Part shown: one piece after another, positions 4,717 to 33,110 of the stretch
Layout of the letters: the number at the start of each line of letters is the position of its first letter
Numbering within the stretch: position 1 is the first letter of the stretch
Origin: Octopus sinensis
Taxonomy: Eukaryota
Direction: 5' to 3'
Assembly: GCF_006345805.1 (NCBI RefSeq)
Contig: NC_043003.1
Location: 109,244,001 to 109,308,000 of the forward strand
DNA length: 64,000 nucleotides
Made by a program: the position numbers and the translations under genes
Notes under the pieces: model-generated
What the model saw: the letters and a program-made list of their open reading frames with translations, nothing else
What the model was told of the DNA's origin: nothing
The model's database searches: none

Positions 4717-4762
4717 GACACAATGTTTCGGCTGATATACCCTCCAGCCTTCATCAGGTGTC
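4717..4762 (-). ncRNA. Minimal type I hammerhead-like motif in a PLE-derived repeat
   Basis: Minus strand: GACAC CUGAUGA A GGCUG(GAGGGUAUAU)CAGCC GAAAC AUU GUGUC. Stem I is 5 bp and stem II is 5 bp; stem III has a C-A mismatch, probably from GAAACGUU. Confidence 0.65.
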
Positions 4763-6601: not shown

Positions 6602-6700
6602 NNNNNNNNNNNNNNNNNNNNNNNNNNNNNNNNNNNNNNNNNNNNNNNNNNNNNNNNNNNNNNNNNNNNNNNNNNNNNNNNNNNNNNNNNNNNNNNNNNN
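6602..6700. other. Assembly gap (99 N)
   Basis: Run of N. Confidence 1.
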
Positions 6701-6871
6701 NAACGGTGGGAGTTCAAAGTAATTAACATTTAACCGAAAACCTAGATGATATAATTGAATGCATTGAATACATTCAATCATACCTGTCTATCTGTCTGTA
6801 GTCAGACCCTCTCTCTCTCTCTCTCTCTATATATATATCTATATAAATATATATATATCTATATATATATA

Positions 6872-8335: not shown

Positions 8336-9937
8336 CAGTGGGGAGAAATAGATATTCGTACATGTCAAAATTCTTTATTCATTTAATTTCTAATGAACAT
8401 AAATGGAATATACCAATACTATATTTGCATACACATGCATAAACTAAGAATATGCAAAAGAAACTAATAAATTATAGTAACTAAGGAATTTATATACAAT
8501 CATAAATATTTAGGGGTGAAAAAAGTATTTGTATAGAATAAATTTATGATTTTCTATGCCACAAAATACTGTTAAAATAATTTTTTTTTTACTAGAACTT
8601 TCTCGTTTGTTCCAATAATCTTATCAGTTGTCATTTTTAAGTGTCAAAACACTAGCTTCTTCATTCAGCTCTGAGACAACATAAAGTGATATCGTAATAA
8701 TGGCGAAAAGTAAAGAACTCACGAATACAGTGAAAACACCTAATTATTGAACAGTGGAAAGCAGGTAAAAGTTACGGGAAAATATCAGAGACCCTTTGTA
8801 TTCCATTTTCTACAATATCTTCATTTATTCAAAGATATAAAAAATTGGGAACTGTTAAAAACAGAATAAGATCCAGTGCACCATGCAAGATTTCTCCTAG
8901 ATCTTTAAGAAAAATGAAGTGAAGAATAAAAAAAAAAAGCGCAATGATCACCAGAAAAGAGTTGCAAGAAGATTTGTTAGCTTCAGGGACTAATGTTACG
9001 CTACGAACAATCAGCAATGAACTTCATAGAAATGGACTGAAGTCATGCTCTCCCAGAAAAACTCCGCTGTTGACATAGAGATGCCCGTTTAAAATTTGTT
9101 TATGAACATAAAGATAAACCTGATACATTCTGGGAAAATGTTCTATGGACAGACGAGTGGAAAATTGAATTGTTTGGAAGAAATTCGCGTAGCCATGTTT
9201 GGAGGAAAGATGTGCTGCCTATTCGCCGAAAACACCAATTCCTACCATAAAGTTTGGAGGTGGCAACATTATGGTGTTGTGGGGGTTTCTCTGCAAATGG
9301 TACTGGCAATTTACAGTGAGAGATGGTAGAATGAATGCAGAGATGTCCAAAAATATTTTGAACAATAATTTATGGGACTCTGTAGAAAGTTCCAGCTTTG
9401 TGAAGGGTGGGTTTTACGACAGGATACAACCCTAAGCACACGGCGAAGTCTACCAAAAATGGATTGTCAATCACAATATAAAAATTATTAGAATGGCCAA
9501 GCCAGTCACCTGACTGAACCCATTGAAAATTTGTGGCGTTATTTGAAAATTAAAATTCATTCAAGGCCCCAACGTGAATTCCAGATTTGAAGAAAATTTG
9601 TCAAGAAGAATGGGAAAAAAATTCCTAAAGAAACATGTGAGTCATTGATTAAAGAACTACAAGAAGAGATTGGTTGAAGTGGAACTGAATAATGGTTATG
9701 CTACGAAGTATTAAATCAGAATTATCAGTTATTTATGTTCTGTACGAATACTTTTTTCACCCCTAAATATTTATAATTGTATATAAATTCATTAGTTACT
9801 ATAATCTATTGGTTTCTTTTTCATAATCTTAGTTGCTGCATGTGTATGCAAATATAGTATTGGTATATCCCATTTATGTTCATTAGAAATTAGATAAAGA
9901 ATTTTGACATGTACGAATATTTATTTACCCCCCACTG
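8336..9937 (+). mobile_element. Complete but inactivated Tc1-family transposon with ~210-bp IR/DR terminal inverted repeats
   Basis: Ends are CAGTGGGG...CCCCACTG followed by TA. TIRs at 8336-8543 and 9731-9937, each with outer and inner direct repeats. Confidence 0.9.
8700..9714 (+). pseudogene. Tc1 DD34E transposase pseudogene (frameshifts and stops)
   Basis: MAKSKEL start; WTDEWKIELFG; PTIKFGGGNIMVLWG; DxxPKHTA; WPSQSPD.NPIENLW; ends GYATKY*. Confidence 0.85.
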
Positions 9938-10084: not shown

Positions 10085-10272
10085 ATGCAATTTTTTTCTT
10101 CCGTCTTCCCTTCCTTGGATCTTTCCTTTTCCTATGTTTCTGATGAAGAGCTCCGCTCGAAACGTTAAATCCTCCTTCTTTCTTTTCTTTCCTGAGCATC
10201 CAATAACATTATACTTGTTCCATGTCCTTGTATTGTTATGTTTTCTCTTTGTGTTTTCATGTTTGGGTTAAC
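10085..10272 (+). mobile_element. PLE pseudo-LTR-like repeat
   Basis: Homologous to 27640-27850 on the opposite strand and contains a hammerhead motif. Confidence 0.7.
10136..10170 (+). ncRNA. Minimal type I hammerhead motif
   Basis: GUUU CUGAUGA A GAGC(UCC)GCUC GAAAC GUU AAAU. Canonical core with a palindromic AACGUU stem III, as in the dimer-type minimal hammerheads of PLEs. Confidence 0.7.
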
Positions 10273-11734: not shown

Positions 11735-12045
11735 TGTTCACTGTGACCGACCAGGCTATCAGATGTTGCTACACATCGCTGGTCACAATGTGCTTCACAT
11801 TGTTTTAGCCTTCAAATGATGCCACCCCACTGGCTAAGCGAGCAGGCCAACAGAAGAACGAGTGAGAGAAAGTTGTGATGAAAGAGTACAGCAGGGATTG
11901 CCACAACCCCCTGCCGGAGCCTCATGGAGCTCTAAGTGTTTTCGCTCAATAAACACTCACAACTCCCAGTCTGGGAATTGAAACTGCGATCCTATGACCA
12001 CGAGTCCGCTGCCTTAACCACCGGGCCATTGCGCCTCCACACACA
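11735..12045 (-). mobile_element. tRNA-headed SINE family D, copy 1
   Basis: Head gtggaggcgcaatggcccggtggttaaggcagcggactcg..cagtttcaattcccag on the minus strand; near-identical to the adjacent copy. Confidence 0.8.
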
Positions 12046-12085: not shown

Positions 12086-12360
12086 CACGTGATCACGTGA
12101 CCGACCAGACCATCAGATGTTGTTACACATCGCTGGTCACAATGCGTTCGCATTGTTTTAGCCTTCAAATGACGCCACCTCGCTGGCTAGGCGAGCAGGC
12201 CAACAGAAGAAAGAGTGGTGAAAGAGTACAGCAGGGATCATCACCCCCTGCCGGAGCCTCGTGGAGCTTTTAGGTGTTTTCGCTCAATAAACACACACAA
12301 CGCCCGGTCTGGGAATCGAAACCGCGATCCTGCGACCGCGAGTCCGCTGCCCTAACCACT
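12085..12360 (-). mobile_element. tRNA-headed SINE family D, copy 2 (first ~20 nt missing, abuts (TA)n)
   Basis: Aligns to 11735-12020 and stops at cctaaccact. Confidence 0.8.
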
Positions 12361-12384
12361 ATATATATATATATATATATATAT

Positions 12385-12595
12385 AATGGTTGTATACTGT
12401 CAATCTAACAAGAACGTGACAGTAGGGGGTACACCACCACTGTATAGCCCTAGGAAGCATCGAACGCCTCCTGATGGCTTTGACACATTTTTCCCTGTGT
12501 CCTTATATACATTTACGAAGGGGAGACAAACGCCCCCGGCTGCCGTAACTGCATCTAGGGACACGTGTTTCAGGATCGTTGTCCTTCATCGGCCT
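12385..12595. repeat. Terminal direct repeat (pseudo-LTR), 3' copy relative to the ORF
   Basis: Identical to 14494-14704 at 206 of 211 positions; offset 2109 bp. Confidence 0.95.
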
Positions 12596-12598
12596 AGA
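12554..12598 (-). ncRNA. Type I hammerhead ribozyme (CCGAUGA core variant), predicted cleavage after GUC between 12560 and 12559
   Basis: Minus strand UCUAGG CCGAUGA AGGA(CAACGA)UCCU GAAAC ACGU GUC CCUAGA. Perfect 6-bp stem I, 4-bp stem II, palindromic ACACGUGU stem III. Confidence 0.8.
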
Positions 12599-12632
12599 GT
12601 AGCAGACACCGGTCAGCTGGTGATATTATATC

Positions 12633-12638
12633 TTTATT
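12633..12638 (-). terminator. Candidate AATAAA polyadenylation signal in the element 3' UTR
   Basis: Plus-strand tttatt, lying about 35 nt upstream of hammerhead stem I in ORF sense. Confidence 0.3.
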
Positions 12639-12887
12639 ATGGGCACGATGGCCCTAATGAAGACGGGACATTACAAGACGGGACGTGGGGTACATAAAGT
12701 AAAATAAAATATGAAATAAGATGATTATTGTATGAGATGGAACGGCTTACGAGCCCCCAACTCGCAGTTCCGTTTAAAATACAATTTTACATTTTATACT
12801 TTTACAATTTACAATTTTACATTTTAACATTACATATATTCCAGTTCAAAATACAATTTTACATTTTATAATTACAATGTTACAATT

Positions 12888-14243
12888 TTAAAATTTCAGT
12901 TCTATTGGACGTTGGTCCGTAATGTACTTTGTCAACTCCATCTGCTCCACCACATTTGGCAAATTCTCATAACATACATAATACGTTGAATAAACCTGCT
13001 CAAACATACTTTTCAATTTACAAAATGTTCCTTTATCTACAAGTACCCCTCCCAAATCGTCATCATGCAGTTCTGGGTGTAATTTAACCCTAATCAATCC
13101 TTTCCTACCTGCAAGTCTTTTCTCCACTTCTGTGTCTTTCACATATAACATGAATACTTTCAGGTATTTTCCTTCAGGTCTTTTCCCTTTTTTACATGCA
13201 TCCAACTGTTCTCTCACTTTTTTTCTCCATTCTAAGTTTACCTCTGTCTTTGTCTGTTCGTCCTTTTCTTTGCACGTTCCCTCTTTTTCTTCTGTTGTCT
13301 TGCTTTTGGTTTTTTTCTTTTTTAGAACTTTCGGTGGTGATTCCACCCTTGTTCTCTTCCTATCTCCTGTTCTTTCCTCCTCTGCACTTGCACATTCTTC
13401 TTCCATATCCTCATTTAGCTGCTCCTCCGTTTGTGCCTCCACTGCTTTTGTTTCTTCCTGCACTTCTCCCTCCTCCACACACGTATCTTTACTCTCCTTC
13501 GTTACCGCCTCCGGTGCTATGGTTTTCTTCAGCGGGCACACATCCTTCATGTGGCCTCTTAATTTACAATTATAGCAGACTGGGGGTCTTCCCTCTACCA
13601 CGACTCTAAGCCGTGTCTCATCAGGGAAGACCAACTCCTCCGGGATGTTGTACAGGTCTCGCACGGTTATATGTGCCAGAACCTGCACCGCATATCCCCA
13701 CCACTTAACCTCTCTTGACTTCTCCACCTTCAACACCTCCACACTTTCCTTGCAGTTAAAAACTACTGCTGCTAATAACCTCTCCATATTAAATTTGGGT
13801 GCAATTCTACCAATTCTTATCCTCACTGCCCTCCTTCTGCAGTAACTTGGTAGTAAAGTCCAACTTTCCATTTTCAAAATTCTTGTTGCATTCTTTTTTG
13901 CTTCATTCTCATTTTTAAAATGTACCACCACTGTGGCATATTTCCTTCCTCTGTTGAAAAATGTGGGTTCTCCCTCAATTCCTTTCAGGCATTCTTCTAT
14001 TTCTTCTGTCTCTGCTACTTCTATTTTTTTCGACGCCACACACCATGTCCTGTACGTTATCATACGCTTCTCCGCGCTGCTTTCCTCTTCTTCGGACGGT
14101 GTGACTCTCATGCAGTCACCCTCCCTCTTCAAACTGTCGAAATACTTTTGTAAAGTCTTCTGTTCGACCACCACTTCCTCCATTTCCAGTTCACTGGCAA
14201 CCAGGCCTCTGCCTGCTGCTCTCGCATAAGTCTGCTCTTGCAT
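12888..14243 (-). CDS. LINE-ORF1/gag-like nucleic-acid-binding protein, 451 aa from the first ATG (track start 14348 is a TTG); RRM-like region, one CX2CX4HX4C knuckle, charged C-terminal region
   Basis: Uninterrupted frame. TYARAA near the N-terminus; RVVVEGRPPVCYNCKLRGHMKDVCP (knuckle at 13536-13577), which resembles the V-x-x-x-G-x-P-x-x-C context of L1/Tx1-type ORF1 proteins; E/K-rich low-complexity tail. Confidence 0.85.
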   Translation of the reverse strand: MQEQTYARAAGRGLVASELEMEEVVVEQKTLQKYFDSLKREGDCMRVTPSEEEESSAEKRMITYRTWCVASKKIEVAETEEIEECLKGIEGEPTFFNRGRKYATVVVHFKNENEAKKNATRILKMESWTLLPSYCRRRAVRIRIGRIAPKFNMERLLAAVVFNCKESVEVLKVEKSREVKWWGYAVQVLAHITVRDLYNIPEELVFPDETRLRVVVEGRPPVCYNCKLRGHMKDVCPLKKTIAPEAVTKESKDTCVEEGEVQEETKAVEAQTEEQLNEDMEEECASAEEERTGDRKRTRVESPPKVLKKKKTKSKTTEEKEGTCKEKDEQTKTEVNLEWRKKVREQLDACKKGKRPEGKYLKVFMLYVKDTEVEKRLAGRKGLIRVKLHPELHDDDLGGVLVDKGTFCKLKSMFEQVYSTYYVCYENLPNVVEQMELTKYITDQRPIELKF

Positions 14244-14493
14244 TTTCAAAAATCTCCAAAAAAAATTTTCCACGTCCTCCAGCAACGAACTCGAACTCAC
14301 AACCTCTTCACAATGACGCACTCGAAACAAACACACCAGAATAACCAAAAAAAAAAAGGAGGCTGGTGATATTTGCCTCGACTTCGTATTTGTATATATC
14401 TATATTCAGTGAAGTCTATTCACTGATTATCAAAATAAGAAATATTGAATTTCTAAATCTCTCGTAGAGACATGTACGGTGGTGGGGTGATAG

Positions 14494-14704
14494 AATGGTT
14501 GTATACTGTCAATCTAACAAGAACGTGACAGTAGGGGGTACACCACCGCTGTATAGCCCTAGGAAGCATCAAACGCCTCCTGATGGCTTTGACACATTTT
14601 TCCCTGTGTCCTTATATACATTTACGAAGGGGAGACAAACACCCCCGGTTGCCGGAACTGCATCTAGGGACACGTGTTTCAGGATCGTTGTCCTTCATCG
14701 GCCT
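14494..14704. repeat. Terminal direct repeat (pseudo-LTR), 5' copy relative to the ORF
   Basis: See 12385-12595. Confidence 0.95.
14612..14618 (-). promoter_or_regulatory. TATA-like TATATAA inside the direct repeat, upstream of the ORF (also at 12503-12509)
   Basis: Minus strand gtatataagg. Position only; no functional evidence. Confidence 0.25.
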
Positions 14705-14707
14705 GAA
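14663..14707 (-). ncRNA. Second type I hammerhead copy; stem I partly replaced by the fold-back junction
   Basis: Minus strand UUCAGG CCGAUGA AGGA(CAACGA)UCCU GAAAC ACGU GUC CCUAGA. Stem I is 3 bp + mismatch + 2 bp. Confidence 0.7.
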
Positions 14708-14949
14708 ACACGTGTCCCTAGATGCAGTTCCGGCAGCCGGGGGTGTTTGTCTCCCCTTCGTAAATGTATATAAGGACACAGGGAAAAATGTGTCAAAGCC
14801 ATCAGGAGGCGTTTGATGCTTCCTAGGGCTATACAGCGGTGGTGTACCCCCTACTGTCACGTTCTTGTTAGATTGACAGTATACAACCATTCTATCGCCC
14901 CACCACCATACATGTCTCTACGAGAGATTTAGAAATTCAATATTTCTTA

Positions 14950-15002
<53 letters not shown>

Positions 15003-15115: not shown

Positions 15116-15295
15116 GAAAAGTCATCAGAAGTTTGGAAAAAATCCTTTTATTTCTTCATTATTATTAGCGCCTTCATTCCTTTCTAGAACTTGTCAAATA
15201 AAATCTTATTTGACAAGTTCTATCTAGAAAGGAACAAAAGTGCTAATAATAATGAAGAAATGAAAGGATTTTTTTCCAAAATTCTGATGACTTTT
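15116..15295. repeat. Fold-back palindrome (~85-bp arms, 4-nt loop) of a PLE-terminus-like sequence
   Basis: gtcatcagaagtttggaaaaaatcc...cttgtcaaataa aatc ttatttgacaag...ggatttttttccaaaattctgatgac. The right arm is also found singly at about 27975-28060. Confidence 0.85.
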
Positions 15296-15544: not shown

Positions 15545-15870
15545 GTGTTTGTGCATAGAGAGGAGAGGCACATTTTGTTGGTTACGATGGAACAGCTTGC
15601 TCGTGAAATTAACGTGCAAGTGACTGAGCAATCCACAGACACGTGTACCCCTAACGTAATTCTCAGGAAGATTCAACGTGACACAGAGAGTGACAAGGCT
15701 GGTCCTTTGAAATACAGGTACAACTCATTTTTGCCAGCTGAGTGGACTGGAGCAACTTGAAATAAAGTGCCTTGTTCAAGGACACAACACATTGCTGGGA
15801 ATTGAACTCACAACCTTATGATCATGAGTCGAATGCCCTAACCACTAAGCCATGTGCCTTCATGCAAGGA
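15545..15870 (-). mobile_element. SINE family E copy
   Basis: Homologous to 2025-2335 and 58880-59210. Confidence 0.75.
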
Positions 15871-16567: not shown

Positions 16568-17687
16568 GTCACCAGCGGTGTTCCCCAGGGAACTGTTTTG
16601 GGTCCGCTACTCTTCATAATTTATGTAAACGACCTTTCCAGTGTCGTACATCACTGCAAAGTGAAAATATTCGCTGATGTCACTAAGCTCCAGCAAATCG
16701 TCAATGAAGAAGCAGACCGAACTCAACTCCAGTCTGACCTATATGCTGTGAGTCAATGGGCAGACAGAAACAAAATGCAACTGAATGAGGGAAAATTTGA
16801 GCTGATGCATTTTGGAAGAAATTCCTCACTAAAACAACCATACTCTCTTCCTTCAGGGGAACCGCTCACAGCCTCTAACAATATCAGAGACCTGGGTGTA
16901 ATTGTTGATGACGATCTCAGTTGGAGTGCACACATCAACGAGAAGGTCGATACAGCTCGTAGGATGAGTTCCTGGATCTTAAGAACTTTCCGGTCCAGAG
17001 AACAAGGTGTCATCATACCACTTTTTTCATCCTTTGTACGGCCACACCTTGAATACTGCTGCCCACTGTGGTCTCCTCACACAAGACAAAACATCTCCAG
17101 AATTGAGTCACCCCAGAGGGCTCTCACTAAACAAATTGAAGACATGGCTGCTCTCGATTATTGGGATCGCCTTAAAGCCTTGAAACTTTACTCCCTCCAG
17201 CGTCGCCGTGAGCGGTACATCATTTGTACGATGTGGAAAATATACCGCCAACTTTGCCCAAACGACCTAAACATTAGCTTCAAGGTTCACCCGAGACTTG
17301 GACCACGGGCTATACGTCCCCTGCCAAATTCAAGATCACAACATACATGTACACTGCAACATAATTTCTTTTCCTCAACAGGCCCTGCCCTATTTAACAT
17401 TGTCCCGAGGGAGATCAAAGAGGAAAAGGATCCCATCAACTTCAAACAGAGTCTGGATAGATTCCTTCAAAGAATACCAGATAAGCCACCCATAATTGGA
17501 TACAACTCACCCAACAAGAACTCACTACTTGAACAAAACTGGATACAACTCACCCAACAAGAACTCACTACTTGAACAAAACTTGACTTAAACAGGATTC
17601 GAATAATCCTATCAGGTGGTGCTATTAAGTTAGACATGGCCTGGACCAATCTCTGGTCGAAACATATCTAAGTTTTATCTAAGTTTT

Positions 17688-30934: not shown

Positions 30935-33110
30935 TTTATATGAAAATTGGTATATCCAATAGCATTACACCACTGTAAATAGTGGCCCTTTAAGCAATGA
31001 GTCCATAGATGATTAATGGATCAGATGGGTGCTGATGATGGGGCAAAAGCCTCCGAAATATGGCATATCCACCCATTACCCATTTTTTCATCTTCAATCA
31101 CATTGTTTGTTTACATCTGATGTCTTGGATACTAAACATCATCATCATCATCATCATCATCATCGTTTAATGTCCGTTTTCCATGCTAGCATGGGTTGGA
31201 CTGTTCGACAGGGGTCTGGGAATACAGGAGGCTGCAGCAGGCTCCAGTCTGATCTGGCAGTGTTTCTACAGCTGGATGCCCTTCATAATGCTAACAACTC
31301 TGTGAGTGTAGTGGGTGCTTTTTACATGCCACCTGCATGGAAGCCAGTCGAGGCGGCGCTGGCAACGGCCACGTTTGGATGGTGCTTTTTACATGCCACC
31401 GGCACATTGTAACAAAATCAGTGCTGGCTATAATTCTATAGAAATTCTGTAGAGTTGACCTGAACATGTAATTTAAGTGCACTGCTAAGACAATAGTACA
31501 TGGTATTGACTTATAAAATCGTTTGATATACTTCATAGTATATTATGGTTGCATAACGAAATAATGCCTACAAGTCATTAATATTTTGTCTTGTACTTCC
31601 ATCATTCTATCATCCTAGGTAAAATGAGGCAGGCAACACATTTGGAATAAAATATTGGCATAGACACAGGTGTGGCTGTGTGGTAAAAAGCTTGCTTCCC
31701 GACCACATGGTTCTGGGTTCAGTCCCGCTGCATGGCATGTTGGGCAAGTGTTTTCTACTATAGCCTTGGGCCAGCTAAAGCCTTGTGAGTTGATTTGGTT
31801 GATGGAAACTGAAAGAAGCTTGTATTTATATATCTACGTGGGAGTGTCCTTGTGCCTGTCCCCTGCCACCACGTCATAACTGGTGTTGGTGTGTTTATGT
31901 CCCTGTAACTTAGCAGTTTAGCAAAAGAGGGCGATAGAATAAGTACCAGACTTAATAAAATTAAGTACTGGATCGATTCACTTGACTAAAAATTATTCAA
32001 GGCAGTGCTCCAGCATGGTTGCAATCAAATGACTGAATGAAGTAAAAGATAAAAGATTAGAGACTATATATATATATATATATATGATGTTTGTGTGTAT
32101 ATGGAGGTGGGTATGGTCAAGACAAGGATACACAAACATACATGCATACTCATACATACATATATATTTACACAGATACAAATGGATGGACACACAGACA
32201 CACACACACGCATCTTGATGGTGCCATGTGTAAAGCACTTGTGCCAGGGCTTTATAAAAAGCAGTCTACTCTGTAAAGAGGCTGGTGTTGGGAAGGGCAT
32301 CCAGCTGTAGAAACAATGCAAACAGACAACTGGAGCTGGTGCATCCCTGTGGCTGGCAAGCTCCTGTAGAACTGTCCATCTCATGCCAGTATGGAAAATG
32401 GATGCTAAATAATGATGATGATGATGATGATATATAGCTCCAAGCCTGACTGAAGCCTTGTGAGTGGATTTGGTAGATGGAAACTGAATAAAACTTGTCA
32501 CATACATTAAAAGTAAAGACCCCCTTCAGTCATGAATGACCATAGGATTGCACATAGAAAGTTACCTTCCAAGGCACAGGACTGGGGGAAAGGTTGTTTT
32601 TTATGGAAGACCAGCAGCTGCCCAGCCTCCCCTCTCCACACCACTGATGTTATCCAAGGGAAAGGAAAAGGGGCCGATACAGCTTGGCATCAGTGATGTT
32701 GCAACTCATTTCTACAGCTGAGTTCCTTCTTCCTTCTCAAGCCATGCCAGGCTCATAAGGGCTGGTTTCCTGGTTTCAGTGGCGAAGAAATTCCCCACCT
32801 GGACGGGACGCTGCTCTGTCGCAGGATTACTCATTTTTGCCAGCTGAGTGGACTGGAGCAACGAGAAACGAAGTGTTTTACTCAAGAACACAATGCATCG
32901 CCTGGTTCAGGAATCGAAACCACAACCTTACGATCATGAGTTCATCACCCTAACCATTAAGCCACGTGCCTCCACACAGCTGAGTGAACTGGAGCAATGT
33001 GAAATGAAGTGTCTTGATCAAGAACACAACACAAAGCCTGGTCCAGGAATCAAACTTGCTCCCTCATGATCGTCACACACACACACACACATATCTATCA
33101 TCATCATCAT

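What the first reader, a model, noticed from the sequence alone, without database searches (positions are those of the whole stretch)
12385..14951. Protein-coding, hammerhead-flanked retroelement: a gag/ORF1-only 'coding retrozyme' with a 2109-nt unit
Seen: one intact knuckle-protein ORF with no RT or endonuclease. It lies between two 211-bp direct repeats, each folding into a type I hammerhead in the ORF sense. The 5' end is a 250-bp fold-back and both flanks are (TA)n. Cleavage at both GUC sites would release a 2109-nt monomer carrying the 5' UTR, ORF and 3' UTR. Established: hammerhead-bearing terminal repeats and inverted 5' repeats characterise Penelope-like elements, and retrozymes are hammerhead-flanked but non-coding. 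ORF1-like knuckle proteins normally precede an ORF2 in LINEs. Inference: this is a non-autonomous family that encodes its own RNA chaperone/capsid-like protein, self-processes, possibly circularises, and borrows a PLE RT/endonuclease in trans. I know of no described family with this combination, but cannot search to confirm.
Basis: partly seen in the sequence, partly recalled or inferred. Interest (0 to 1): 0.92.

Follow-up and report, generated by a model that had tools for sequence, protein, structure and literature searches.

The report
ORF1-only LINE nested in hammerhead repeat
The "protein-coding hammerhead element" is most likely two octopus jumping genes, one inside the other: a LINE that kept only its RNA-binding ORF1 has landed just upstream of the ribozyme of a small 363-base hammerhead repeat. 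The same nesting recurs at four other octopus loci, which is the interesting part.

Summary
There is a 215-nt direct repeat spaced 2109 nt apart, a fold-back with 250-nt arms, (TA)n on both flanks, and one intact 451-aa CCHC ORF with no RT or endonuclease.

The hammerhead is real as a family. Five related motifs share the core and show compensatory helix changes. This copy, however, has C instead of U at core position 4, its 5' copy lacks the native helix I strand, and Rfam scores none of the motifs.

The single "coding retrozyme" reading is not the best fit.
- The ORF is a homologue of ORF1 from L1/Tx1-like LINEs. Octopus relatives carry an APE+RT ORF2 downstream.
- A 1734-nt ORF1-only LINE part, with its own UTRs, is bracketed by an exact 12-nt duplication.
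- Removing that part leaves a 363-nt hammerhead unit that folds into a rod (z = -7).
- This unit looks like a metazoan retrozyme and has Penelope-like insertion features.

Four more composites (O. vulgaris, O. sinensis) carry different ORF1 subfamilies at slightly different points just 5' of the hammerhead. This suggests homing or co-mobilisation, which remains unresolved. Both components belong to known kinds; the recurrent association appears to be undescribed.

The parts
12360..12385 (.). (TA)n microsatellite, left flank (3' side of the element in its own sense)
12381..12559 (-). Segment X of the second (partial) hammerhead-repeat unit U. It runs from the predicted cleavage site to the 3' end of the insertion (...GACAGTATACAACCATT).
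   Evidence: This is the 3' copy of the direct repeat. Related composites end at the same position (L007, L008, L012).
12549..12605 (-). Complete type-I hammerhead-like motif: CUGC-UAC-UCUAGG / CCGAUGA / AGGA-CAACGA-UCCU / GAAA / CACGUG / UC|CCUAGA-U-GCAG. Predicted cleavage lies between 12560 and 12559. The core has C at position 4.
   Evidence: no Rfam hit
12616..12627 (-). 3' copy of the 12-nt duplication AATATCACCAGC (target-site duplication of the LINE part). It ends 17 nt after the AATAAA hexamer.
12628..12887 (-). 3' UTR of the ORF1-only LINE part. It ends in the module ...TGTCCC..GGCCATCGTGCCCATAATAAAGATAT, which is shared with full-length octopus LINEs.
   Evidence: alignment with L001, L005, L002, L004, L007, L012
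12888..14243 (-). Intact ORF of 451 aa plus stop. It encodes tandem RRM-like folds (about residues 21-245), a CCHC knuckle (13577..13536), a disordered charged linker and a folded C-terminal domain (about residues 358-445). It is a homologue of LINE ORF1.
14244..14361 (-). T/G-rich 5' UTR of the LINE part
   Evidence: by eye, similar 5' UTRs in L002, L004, L008
14362..14373 (-). 5' copy of the 12-nt duplication AATATCACCAGC
14374..14489 (-). Unique part of hammerhead-repeat unit 1: a 56-nt 'tail' (14489..14434, also present in the inverted arm but absent from the 3' end) plus segment Y (14433..14374).
14490..14704 (-). 5' copy of the direct repeat: hammerhead core, helix II, helix III and cleavage site (after 14669), plus segment X. 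The native helix I 5' strand is missing.
14702..14951 (+). Inverted, 5'-truncated copy of X plus tail. Together with 14434-14683 it forms the fold-back with 250-nt arms.
   Evidence: The same arrangement occurs in L008, L012 and L002.
14955..14998 (.). (TA)n microsatellite, right flank

Best explanation
The locus is a nested pair of non-autonomous retroelements in an octopus genome.

(1) The hammerhead repeat, called U here.
- It has a 363-nt period, in this order: hammerhead, X (179 nt), tail (56 nt), Y, then a 12-nt site R.
- It was inserted into a (TA)n microsatellite as about 1.6 head-to-tail units plus an inverted 5'-truncated copy.
- It resembles metazoan non-LTR retrozymes in having a type-I hammerhead, a unit under 400 nt and a rod-like fold. 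It resembles Penelope-like elements in having a partial tandem ('pLTR'), an inverted upstream copy, a tail at one end only and a (TA)n target.

(2) The LINE part.
- A 1734-nt ORF1-only derivative of an L1/Tx1-like LINE later integrated 23 nt upstream of the second unit's hammerhead core. It is comparable to mammalian HAL1.
- Integration was by LINE-type target-primed reverse transcription and duplicated 12 nt (AATATCACCAGC).
- This insertion stretches the hammerhead-to-hammerhead distance from 363 to 2109 nt.
- The ORF encodes an RRM-RRM-CCHC-CTD RNA-binding protein. It must use ORF2p (APE+RT) supplied in trans by full-length relatives.

Shown here: the anatomy, the homologies, the duplication, and the recurrence of the nesting.
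Inferred: that a PLE enzyme moves U; that U RNA self-cleaves and circularises; that the LINE part homes to this site through its read-through 3' end.
For: The ORF is a LINE ORF1.
- An exhaustive HMMER search finds 335 relatives at E<=1e-3. The top hits that were looked up are octopod proteins named 'uncharacterized' or 'CCHC-type'.
- In L005 and L011 (O. vulgaris, O. sinensis) and L001 (O. sinensis), the homologous ORF1 (31-36% identity) is followed by an ORF2 with Exo_endo_phos + RVT_1 + zf-RVT.
- A distant relative on a marine metagenome contig is likewise followed by APE+RT.
- The AlphaFold model is confident (pLDDT >90 over residues 21-245 and 360-445). Its best PDB matches are tandem-RRM proteins.

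The LINE part is separate.
- The only repeat of 9 nt or more between the 5' and 3' non-coding parts is the 12-mer at 14373..14362 and 12627..12616. Similarity stops sharply at its edges.
- L002 has an 11-mer at the equivalent two junctions. L012 has a 9/11 match there.
- The 3' UTR end module aligns with those of full-length LINEs and of ORF1-only tandem arrays that have no hammerhead.
- L012 also holds a 71-nt 5'-truncated copy of its LINE 3' end, with a perfect 17-bp TSD and no hammerhead sequence.

U is a unit.
- Removing the LINE part plus one 12-mer gives 363 nt. Its MFE is -128 kcal/mol against -88 +/- 5.7 for shuffles (z = -6.96), and a long helix runs continuously across the excision point.
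- A head-to-head pair of 5'-truncated U fragments, 95-97% identical to this copy, sits alone in another (TA)n in O. vulgaris.

The hammerhead is conserved. Across five related motifs, 27 of 30 proximal helix I cells and 16 of 20 helix II cells are paired. The distal helix I stems all pair but with different sequences, there are several double compensatory changes, and one motif has a C3-G8 to U3-A8 core covariation.

ORF1-only forms make a moderately supported clade (80/88) that excludes the ORF2-linked ORF1s.
Against: - No uninterrupted junction (Y-R-hammerhead in one piece) was observed directly. The 363-nt unit is a reconstruction.
- Five of the ORF1 loci examined are nested within about 35 nt of the same spot. 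A purely accidental nesting does not explain this, so some coupling (homing or co-mobilisation) must be added.
- L007 looks like a composite truncated at its 5' end inside the ORF with no U sequence upstream. That fits mobilisation of the composite from the U 3' end.
- In L012 the duplicated 11-mer is imperfect, and its 3' hammerhead has lost most of the helix I 5' strand.
- The enzyme that moves U was not identified. No PLE RT was found in the DNA available.
- Octopus genomes could not be searched by nucleotide, so copy numbers are unknown.
Confidence: 0.7

Rival explanations
1. The whole 2109-nt hammerhead-to-hammerhead stretch is one non-autonomous 'coding retrozyme' family. It is transcribed, self-cleaved at both GUC sites, perhaps circularised, and copied as a unit by a PLE RT/endonuclease.
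For: - The ORF is flanked by hammerhead-bearing direct repeats in its own sense.
- Five composites with the same layout exist in two or three species.
- L007 may be a 5'-truncated composite.
- The non-coding U parts of different composites are better conserved (70-76% nt between this copy and L008) than their proteins (about 29% aa).
Against: - The junctions between the LINE part and U differ in every composite. Each has its own short duplication.
- The U-associated ORF1s fall in two different subclades, interleaved with tandem forms that lack a hammerhead.
- In L012 the upstream hammerhead keeps the native U helix I strand rather than the LINE 3' end. That is not expected if the upstream repeat had been copied from a composite template.
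- The LINE part moves on its own with a 17-bp TSD.
- This copy's 5' hammerhead is incomplete, and both copies carry C4.
Confidence: 0.15
2. The whole system is LINE-driven. U is a SINE-like or satellite-like partner moved by the same L1/Tx1-like ORF2p rather than by a PLE. The palindromic (TA)n target explains the head-to-head and tandem copies.
For: - Full-length relatives themselves form head-to-tail arrays (L005, L011) or lie in microsatellites (L001 in (ATT)n).
- A (TA)n target is self-complementary, so both DNA ends could prime (inference).
- Cervera & de la Pena 2020 leave both LINEs and PLEs open as mobilisers of retrozymes.
Against: - The U 3' ends (...CAACCATT or ...TTTCTTATT) share nothing with the LINE 3' module.
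- A tail at one end only, an inverted 5'-truncated copy, a pLTR-like partial tandem, a hammerhead and a (TA)n target together are the set described for PLEs.
- Xenopus retrozymes are related to PLE pLTRs.
Confidence: 0.2
3. The element is a simple internal-deletion derivative of an autonomous element that once carried ORF1 plus RT between the same hammerhead repeats.
For: Relatives of the ORF do have an ORF2 downstream. A PLE with an upstream zf-CCHC ORF and a hammerhead has been described in Chara (Chlamys-2_cBra).
Against: - None of the ORF2-bearing relatives is flanked by U or hammerhead sequence (nhmmer).
- The 3' UTR follows the ORF directly and ends in the same module as the full LINEs.
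- ORF1-only units recur as a clade and as tandem arrays in several species.
Confidence: 0.03
4. The hammerhead resemblance is non-functional or a chance match, and the repeats reflect local duplication or misassembly.
For: There is no Rfam hit. The core has C4. The MFE z-score of the isolated 73-nt motif is unremarkable (-0.7).
Against: - The descriptor gives 0 hits in 40 shuffles against 3 observed.
- Five related motifs show covariation.
- The same architecture appears in independent assemblies of O. vulgaris and O. sinensis.
Confidence: 0.03

Closest known systems
Metazoan non-LTR retrozymes (Cervera & de la Pena 2020, PMC7229834)
   Same: The U unit has a type-I hammerhead with a 6-bp helix I, a 4-bp helix II and a very short helix III with a palindromic loop. 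Its unit length (363 nt) falls within the 170-400 nt range. It occurs head to tail and is predicted to fold as a highly self-paired rod.
   Different: Only about 1.6 units are present here rather than a long array. There is an inverted copy and a (TA)n target. This copy has C4 in the core and is interrupted by a protein-coding LINE. No RNA data exist, so circular RNA has not been shown.
Penelope-like elements: pLTRs with hammerheads (Cervera & de la Pena 2014, PMC4209133; Craig et al. 2021, PMC8557442)
   Same: A partial tandem gives pseudo-LTRs. An inverted 5'-truncated copy lies next to the upstream repeat. An extra 'tail' (56 nt here) is present at one end only. The element inserts into (TA)n, and a hammerhead lies in the repeat.
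   Different: There is no RT and no GIY-YIG endonuclease. The hammerhead is of the canonical retrozyme type rather than the minimal PLE type with a long helix II. The ORF present is a LINE ORF1, not a PLE protein.
HAL1 ('half-L1'), ORF1-only derivatives of mammalian L1 (Bao & Jurka 2010, cited in PMC5753468)
   Same: It is a non-autonomous LINE derivative that keeps only ORF1 and its UTRs, forms its own lineage, and must use ORF2p in trans.
   Different: It is found in cephalopods and derives from an L1/Tx1-like LINE whose ORF1 is of the RRM+CCHC type. It has no poly(A) tail, often forms tandem arrays, and is repeatedly found inside a hammerhead repeat.
Target-specific LINEs (R1/R2, Tx1 clade) and R2's 5' HDV-like ribozyme (from my own knowledge, not tested here)
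   Same: Insertion recurs at nearly the same place in a repeated host sequence. The RNA 3' end may carry target-derived bases that could guide priming. A self-cleaving ribozyme lies next to the LINE in a co-transcribed context.
   Different: The insertion points differ by up to about 20 nt between subfamilies. One off-target insertion was seen (L012). The ribozyme belongs to the host repeat, lies downstream of the LINE, and is a hammerhead.
Chlamys-2_cBra (Chara braunii PLE with an upstream zf-CCHC ORF and a 3' hammerhead; PMC8557442)
   Same: It combines a gag-like CCHC ORF with a hammerhead in one retroelement.
   Different: That element is autonomous (it has an RT), comes from a green alga, and its ORF is not known to be related to LINE ORF1.

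Membership tests
Hammerhead ribozyme, type I | Conserved core: C3 U4 G5 A6 N7 G8 A9 ... G12 A13 A14 A15.1 ... U16.1 H17 | tested here: inconclusive
   This copy matches every position except U4, which is C, in both repeats. Relatives have U4: L008 CUGAAGA, L007 CUGAUGA, L012 3' copy CUGAUGA. L002 has the U3-A8 covariant, a variant reported in Schistosoma PLE hammerheads.
Hammerhead ribozyme, type I | Helices I and II around the core, with helix I open, supported by covariation | tested here: met
   Five related motifs: helix I 27/30 cells paired, helix II 16/20 cells paired. The distal helix I stems all pair but with different sequences, and there are double compensatory changes. The descriptor gives 0 hits in 40 shuffles.
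Hammerhead ribozyme, type I | Match to a curated covariance model (Rfam) | tested here: not met
   No hammerhead family at E<=10 for this copy or for the canonical-core relatives. A different hammerhead-like motif in the window also gets only a sub-threshold hit.
Hammerhead ribozyme, type I | Self-cleavage after H17 | not testable with these tools
   Needs in vitro transcription. A monomer-versus-dimer test is required because helix III is only 1-2 bp with a palindromic loop.
Metazoan non-LTR retrozyme | Short (about 170-400 nt) non-coding unit with a type-I hammerhead, arranged head to tail | tested here: met
   The unit is 363 nt once the LINE part and one 12-mer are removed, with about 1.6 units present. 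The L012 unit is about 341 nt.
Metazoan non-LTR retrozyme | Highly self-paired monomer RNA | tested here: met
   MFE -128 kcal/mol, z = -6.96 against 100 shuffles; rod-like fold.
Metazoan non-LTR retrozyme | Expressed as linear and circular monomer RNA; many genomic copies | not testable with these tools
   No RNA data and no nucleotide search of octopus genomes were available. Only one further close copy (95-97% identical, L008 1860-2177) and four diverged relatives were seen.
Penelope-like element (autonomous) | RT with GIY-YIG endonuclease ORF | tested here: not met
   The only ORF is the CCHC protein. Pfam finds only weak zf-CCHC.
Penelope-like element (insertion architecture, i.e. a PLE-mobilised non-autonomous element) | pLTR-type partial tandem, inverted 5'-truncated copy, tail at one end, microsatellite target, hammerhead in the repeat | tested here: met
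   All five features are present here. The inverted upstream copy with tail recurs in L002, L008 and L012. The features are as defined. Homology of U to an octopus PLE pLTR was not tested.
LINE ORF1p (L1/Tx1-like, RRM + CCHC type) | Homology to an ORF1 that precedes an APE+RT ORF2 | tested here: met
   L005, L011, L001 and L003. The fold shows tandem RRM-like domains.
HAL1-like ORF1-only LINE derivative | Own LINE UTRs, no ORF2, target-site duplication, independent copies | tested here: met
   The 3' module is shared with full LINEs. There is a 12-nt duplication. ORF1-only tandem arrays occur in L004, L006 and L009. A 5'-truncated copy has a 17-bp TSD. ORF1-only forms make a clade.
   Five composites were found, but each has different junctions and a different ORF1 subfamily. 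Copy number per subfamily could not be measured.

The most novel reading that the evidence does not exclude
The nesting is not accidental. A lineage of ORF1-only LINEs specialises in a site a few to about 35 nt upstream of the hammerhead of an octopus retrozyme. Its read-through RNA 3' end, which in three subfamilies ends exactly 17 nt after AATAAA and consists of target sequence, guides priming back into other retrozyme copies. The LINE thereby gains the retrozyme's transcription and ribozyme processing. At the extreme, the 2.1-kb hammerhead-to-hammerhead RNA is released, circularised and co-mobilised as a protein-coding retrozyme.
Probability: 0.25. Interest if true: 0.75.

Novelty: new member of a known kind. 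Interest (0 to 1): 0.45.

Why it matters
If the nested reading holds, the locus provides three things:
- a cephalopod example of a hammerhead retrozyme that carries the full Penelope-type insertion signature. This bears on the open question of which enzyme mobilises animal retrozymes;
- an ORF1-only ("half-LINE") lineage outside mammals that has persisted across octopod species;
- a repeated physical association between the two.

The association is the part worth following. It could be a case of a LINE homing to a ribozyme-bearing repeat, or of a retrozyme carrying a protein-coding passenger. Either would be directly testable with a genome-wide junction census and RNA circularity assays.

Tried and rejected
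- Rfam scans of the element and of the canonical-core relatives found no hammerhead. I take this as insensitivity to this short-helix-III variant, not as absence.
- The first word-indexed protein search found nothing because low-complexity words swamped it. The exhaustive HMMER search then worked.
- Pfam and PDB sequence searches of the ORF gave only a weak knuckle.
- I looked for a PLE RT next to other hammerhead motifs in the window by six-frame reading. Only a Tc1/mariner remnant was there, so no PLE partner could be compared.
- I tried to build a covariance model of the hammerhead, but MAFFT mis-registered helix III. I used a manual parse checked by script instead.
- I tested whether the 12-nt duplication is the tip of a longer, decayed repeat. 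It is not.
- I considered twin-priming and hairpin self-priming as origins of the fold-back. In the 194 nt that all three X copies share, the 5' direct copy and the inverted arm differ at 1 site, while the 3' copy differs from both at the same 4-5 sites. This fits fold-back copying or arm homogenisation but does not decide between them.
- I rejected misassembly, because the same architecture occurs in other assemblies.
- The viral, metagenome and prokaryote-genome DNA scans were not used, because none of those collections holds cephalopod genomes.


Full report
**1. What is in the sequence**

On the minus strand, read 5' to 3' from 14998 down to 12360, the region contains the following:
- (TA)n.
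- A 250-nt arm (14951..14702), an 18-nt loop, and the complementary 250-nt arm (14683..14434). The arms differ at 3 positions.
- About 190 nt of leader.
- An ORF with its first ATG at 14243 and its stop at 12890..12888, giving 451 aa.
- A 260-nt 3' UTR.
- A second copy of 215 nt that also occurs at 14704..14490 (12595..12381, 97% identical, spacing 2109).
- (TA)n again.

The ORF has a single CCHC knuckle and no RT or endonuclease. An L1/Tx1-type ORF2 probe finds nothing anywhere in the window. The window holds no second copy of the element.

**2. The hammerhead**

In the ORF sense, the 3' repeat reads CUGC-UAC-UCUAGG / CCGAUGA / AGGA-CAACGA-UCCU / GAAA / CACGUG / UC|CCUAGA-U-GCAG (12605..12549). 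This is the layout of canonical animal type-I hammerheads as described by Cervera & de la Pena: a 6-bp helix I with an internal loop, a 4-bp helix II, and a minimal helix III with a palindromic loop.

Three cautions apply.
- The core has C where U4 is expected, in both copies.
- The 5' copy lacks the native 5' strand of helix I, because the direct repeat begins at AGG|CCGAUGA. It sits at the centre of a very stable fold-back.
- Rfam finds no hammerhead, even at E<=10 on a few hundred bases.

The motif is nevertheless not a chance match. A descriptor search gives 3 motifs in the window and none in 40 block-shuffles.

The comparative evidence is stronger. Four related elements carry a homologous motif at the same place: L008 and L002 from O. 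vulgaris, and L007 and L012 from O. sinensis.
- Their cores are CUGAAGA, UUGAUAA (a U3-A8 covariant; Cervera & de la Pena reported this variant in Schistosoma PLE hammerheads), CUGAUGA, and CUGAUGC/CUGAUGA.
- Across the five motifs, 27 of 30 proximal helix I cells and 16 of 20 helix II cells are paired.
- The distal helix I stems all pair but with unrelated sequences, and several positions show double compensatory changes.
- Rfam also misses the canonical-core relatives, so its silence reflects the models rather than the motif.

I conclude that the family has a conserved hammerhead and that this particular copy carries a core substitution likely to weaken it. The effect of C4 is my expectation from general hammerhead biochemistry and was not tested.

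**3. The ORF is a LINE ORF1**

- The exhaustive HMMER search returns 335 relatives at E<=1e-3. The best-scoring clusters that were looked up are octopod proteins annotated only as uncharacterized or CCHC-type.
- The encoding loci are decisive. In L005 (O. vulgaris) a homologous ORF1 (36% identity) is followed by an APE domain and a 993-aa RT ORF with zf-RVT. The 5.28-kb unit is repeated head to tail.
- L011 and L001 (O. sinensis) are further full-length relatives.
- A distant relative on a marine metagenome contig is also followed by APE+RT.
- The O. vulgaris repeat census lists L1-Tx1 and Penelope among recently active groups.
- The AlphaFold model is confident over residues 21-245 and 360-445. 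Its best structural matches are tandem-RRM proteins. The protein is therefore RRM-RRM-CCHC, a charged linker, and a C-terminal domain.

**4. The coding part is a separate insertion**

- The 5' and 3' non-coding parts share exactly one repeat of 9 nt or more: AATATCACCAGC, at 14373..14362 and 12627..12616. Similarity does not continue on either side of it.
- The 12-mer lies directly after the 3' UTR end module (...GGCCATCGTGCCCATAATAAAGATAT) and directly before a T/G-rich leader.
- That 3' module aligns with the 3' ends of the full-length LINEs L001 and L005, and with ORF1-only units that form tandem arrays with no hammerhead at all (L004). L006 and L009 also hold successive ORF1-homologous segments with no ORF2 match.
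- L002 has an 11-mer (TGCTGGGTTCG) at the two equivalent junctions. L012 has a 9/11 match.
- In all three composites, the downstream copy of the short repeat ends exactly 17 nt after the AATAAA hexamer.
- L012 also contains, 900 bp away, a 71-nt 5'-truncated copy of its LINE 3' end. It stops at that same point and is flanked by a perfect 17-bp target-site duplication.

So the coding part moves by LINE-type target-primed reverse transcription. Its RNA seems to end about 17 nt after AAUAAA, which means it carries a few bases of whatever lies downstream.

**5. What remains is a 363-nt hammerhead unit**

- Joining the flanks (removing 14361..12628 and one 12-mer) gives a 363-nt cleavage-to-cleavage unit. 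Its predicted fold is a rod: -128 kcal/mol against -88 +/- 5.7 for shuffles, z = -6.96. One long helix is continuous across the excision point.
- This size, hammerhead type and fold match metazoan non-LTR retrozymes.
- The way the unit sits in the genome matches what Craig et al. describe for Penelope-like elements: a partial tandem giving pseudo-LTRs, an inverted 5'-truncated copy upstream, an extra tail at one end only (56 nt here), and a (TA)n target.
- The arrangement is regular. In this copy and in L008, the direct copy ends at ...ACAAC(C/T)A..TT before the microsatellite and the inverted copy ends with the tail (...GAGAGATTTAGAAAT...). L012 shows the same sequence ends, but without a (TA)n run directly next to them. 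L007 shows the direct 3' end, and L002 the tailed inverted end. The same two ends appear in a solo head-to-head pair of U fragments (L008 1860-2177, 95-97% identical to this copy).
- A recent preprint relates Xenopus retrozymes to PLE pLTRs.

I therefore consider a PLE enzyme the more likely mobiliser of U, but I could not compare U with an octopus PLE.

**6. The recurrence**

- Of the cephalopod ORF1 loci I could fetch, five are nested in U: this window, L002, L007, L008 and L012.
- Their LINE-to-U junctions all differ. In this copy, L002, L007 and L008 the junction lies about 4, 7, 11 or 23 nt upstream of the hammerhead core. In L012 the short repeat abuts the core, because most of the helix I 5' strand is missing.
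- In the ORF1 tree, the ORF2-linked proteins fall outside a moderately supported clade (80/88) of ORF1-only forms. The U-associated members occupy two subclades, interleaved with tandem forms that have no hammerhead.

Independent insertions at nearly the same place call for an explanation. One possibility is homing guided by the target-derived RNA 3' end, as known for target-specific LINEs (my own knowledge). Another is preferential survival or co-mobilisation of composites. L007, which looks truncated inside the ORF with no U upstream, keeps co-mobilisation open. In L012, the upstream hammerhead retains the native U helix I strand, which argues against the last round having copied a composite template.

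**7. Verdict**

The "single coding retrozyme borrowing a PLE enzyme" reading is only partly right.

The best-supported reading (about 0.7) is an ORF1-only L1/Tx1-like LINE nested, with a 12-bp duplication, in a Penelope-type hammerhead retrozyme that lies in a (TA)n run. Each component is a new member of a known kind. As far as my literature searches show, the repeated association has not been described.

The window is from an octopus, probably O. vulgaris or a close relative, judged by the 95-97% identical U fragment in that assembly. Copy numbers, RNA forms, ribozyme activity and the mobilising enzymes remain untested.

Noticed in passing
window 31002-31077 (+): A second type-I hammerhead-like motif, unrelated to this element, with a canonical core, an 8-bp helix I and a 4-bp helix III. 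It gets only a sub-threshold Rfam hit (RAGATH-1-hammerhead, 21.5 bits, E=0.12).
   Followed up: partly
window 4717-4762 (-) and 10136-10170 (+); L001 11401-11435 (+): Minimal hammerhead motifs of the Penelope type: long or bulged helix II and no helix III. No PLE RT was found next to the window copies.
   Followed up: partly
window 16598-17575 (+): A 325-aa ORF that is the C-terminal half of a LINE reverse transcriptase (Pfam RVT_1, E=4.6e-4). It belongs to a different clade from the L005-type ORF2 (no tblastn hit).
   Followed up: partly
window 11743-12030, 12097-12359, 15795-15853: tRNA-derived SINE copies. The first two are tandem, about 340-354 nt apart. The hammerhead element sits in the (TA)n that follows the second, truncated SINE.
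   Followed up: no
window about 8700-9700 (+ frames): A remnant of a Tc1/mariner-like transposase, seen by eye in six-frame translations.
   Followed up: no
window 15132-15188 / 15223-15279: A MITE-like palindrome with 57-nt arms (88% complementary), which draws spurious miRNA-family hits in Rfam.
   Followed up: no
window 6602-6701: An assembly gap of 100 N.
   Followed up: no
L012 5973-6060: A 71-nt 5'-truncated copy of the ORF1-only LINE 3' end, flanked by a perfect 17-bp target-site duplication (ACTTGAACTTGCACCAA). It ends at the same point, about 17 nt after AATAAA, as the short repeat in the composites.
   Followed up: yes
L005 (whole locus), L011 (whole locus), L001 5720-11360: Full-length L1/Tx1-like LINEs (ORF1, APE, RT, zf-RVT). 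L005 holds a head-to-tail array with a 5.28-kb period and an A36 run in the spacer, and L011 holds successive ORF2-ORF1-ORF2 copies. The L001 copy lies between (ATT)n runs.
   Followed up: partly
L004 6000-10600; L006 3460-5460; L009 740-2700: L004 has ORF1-only units arranged head to tail with no ORF2 and no hammerhead between them. L006 and L009 hold successive ORF1-homologous segments with no ORF2 match. L009 comes from a Logan assembly whose species was not identified.
   Followed up: partly
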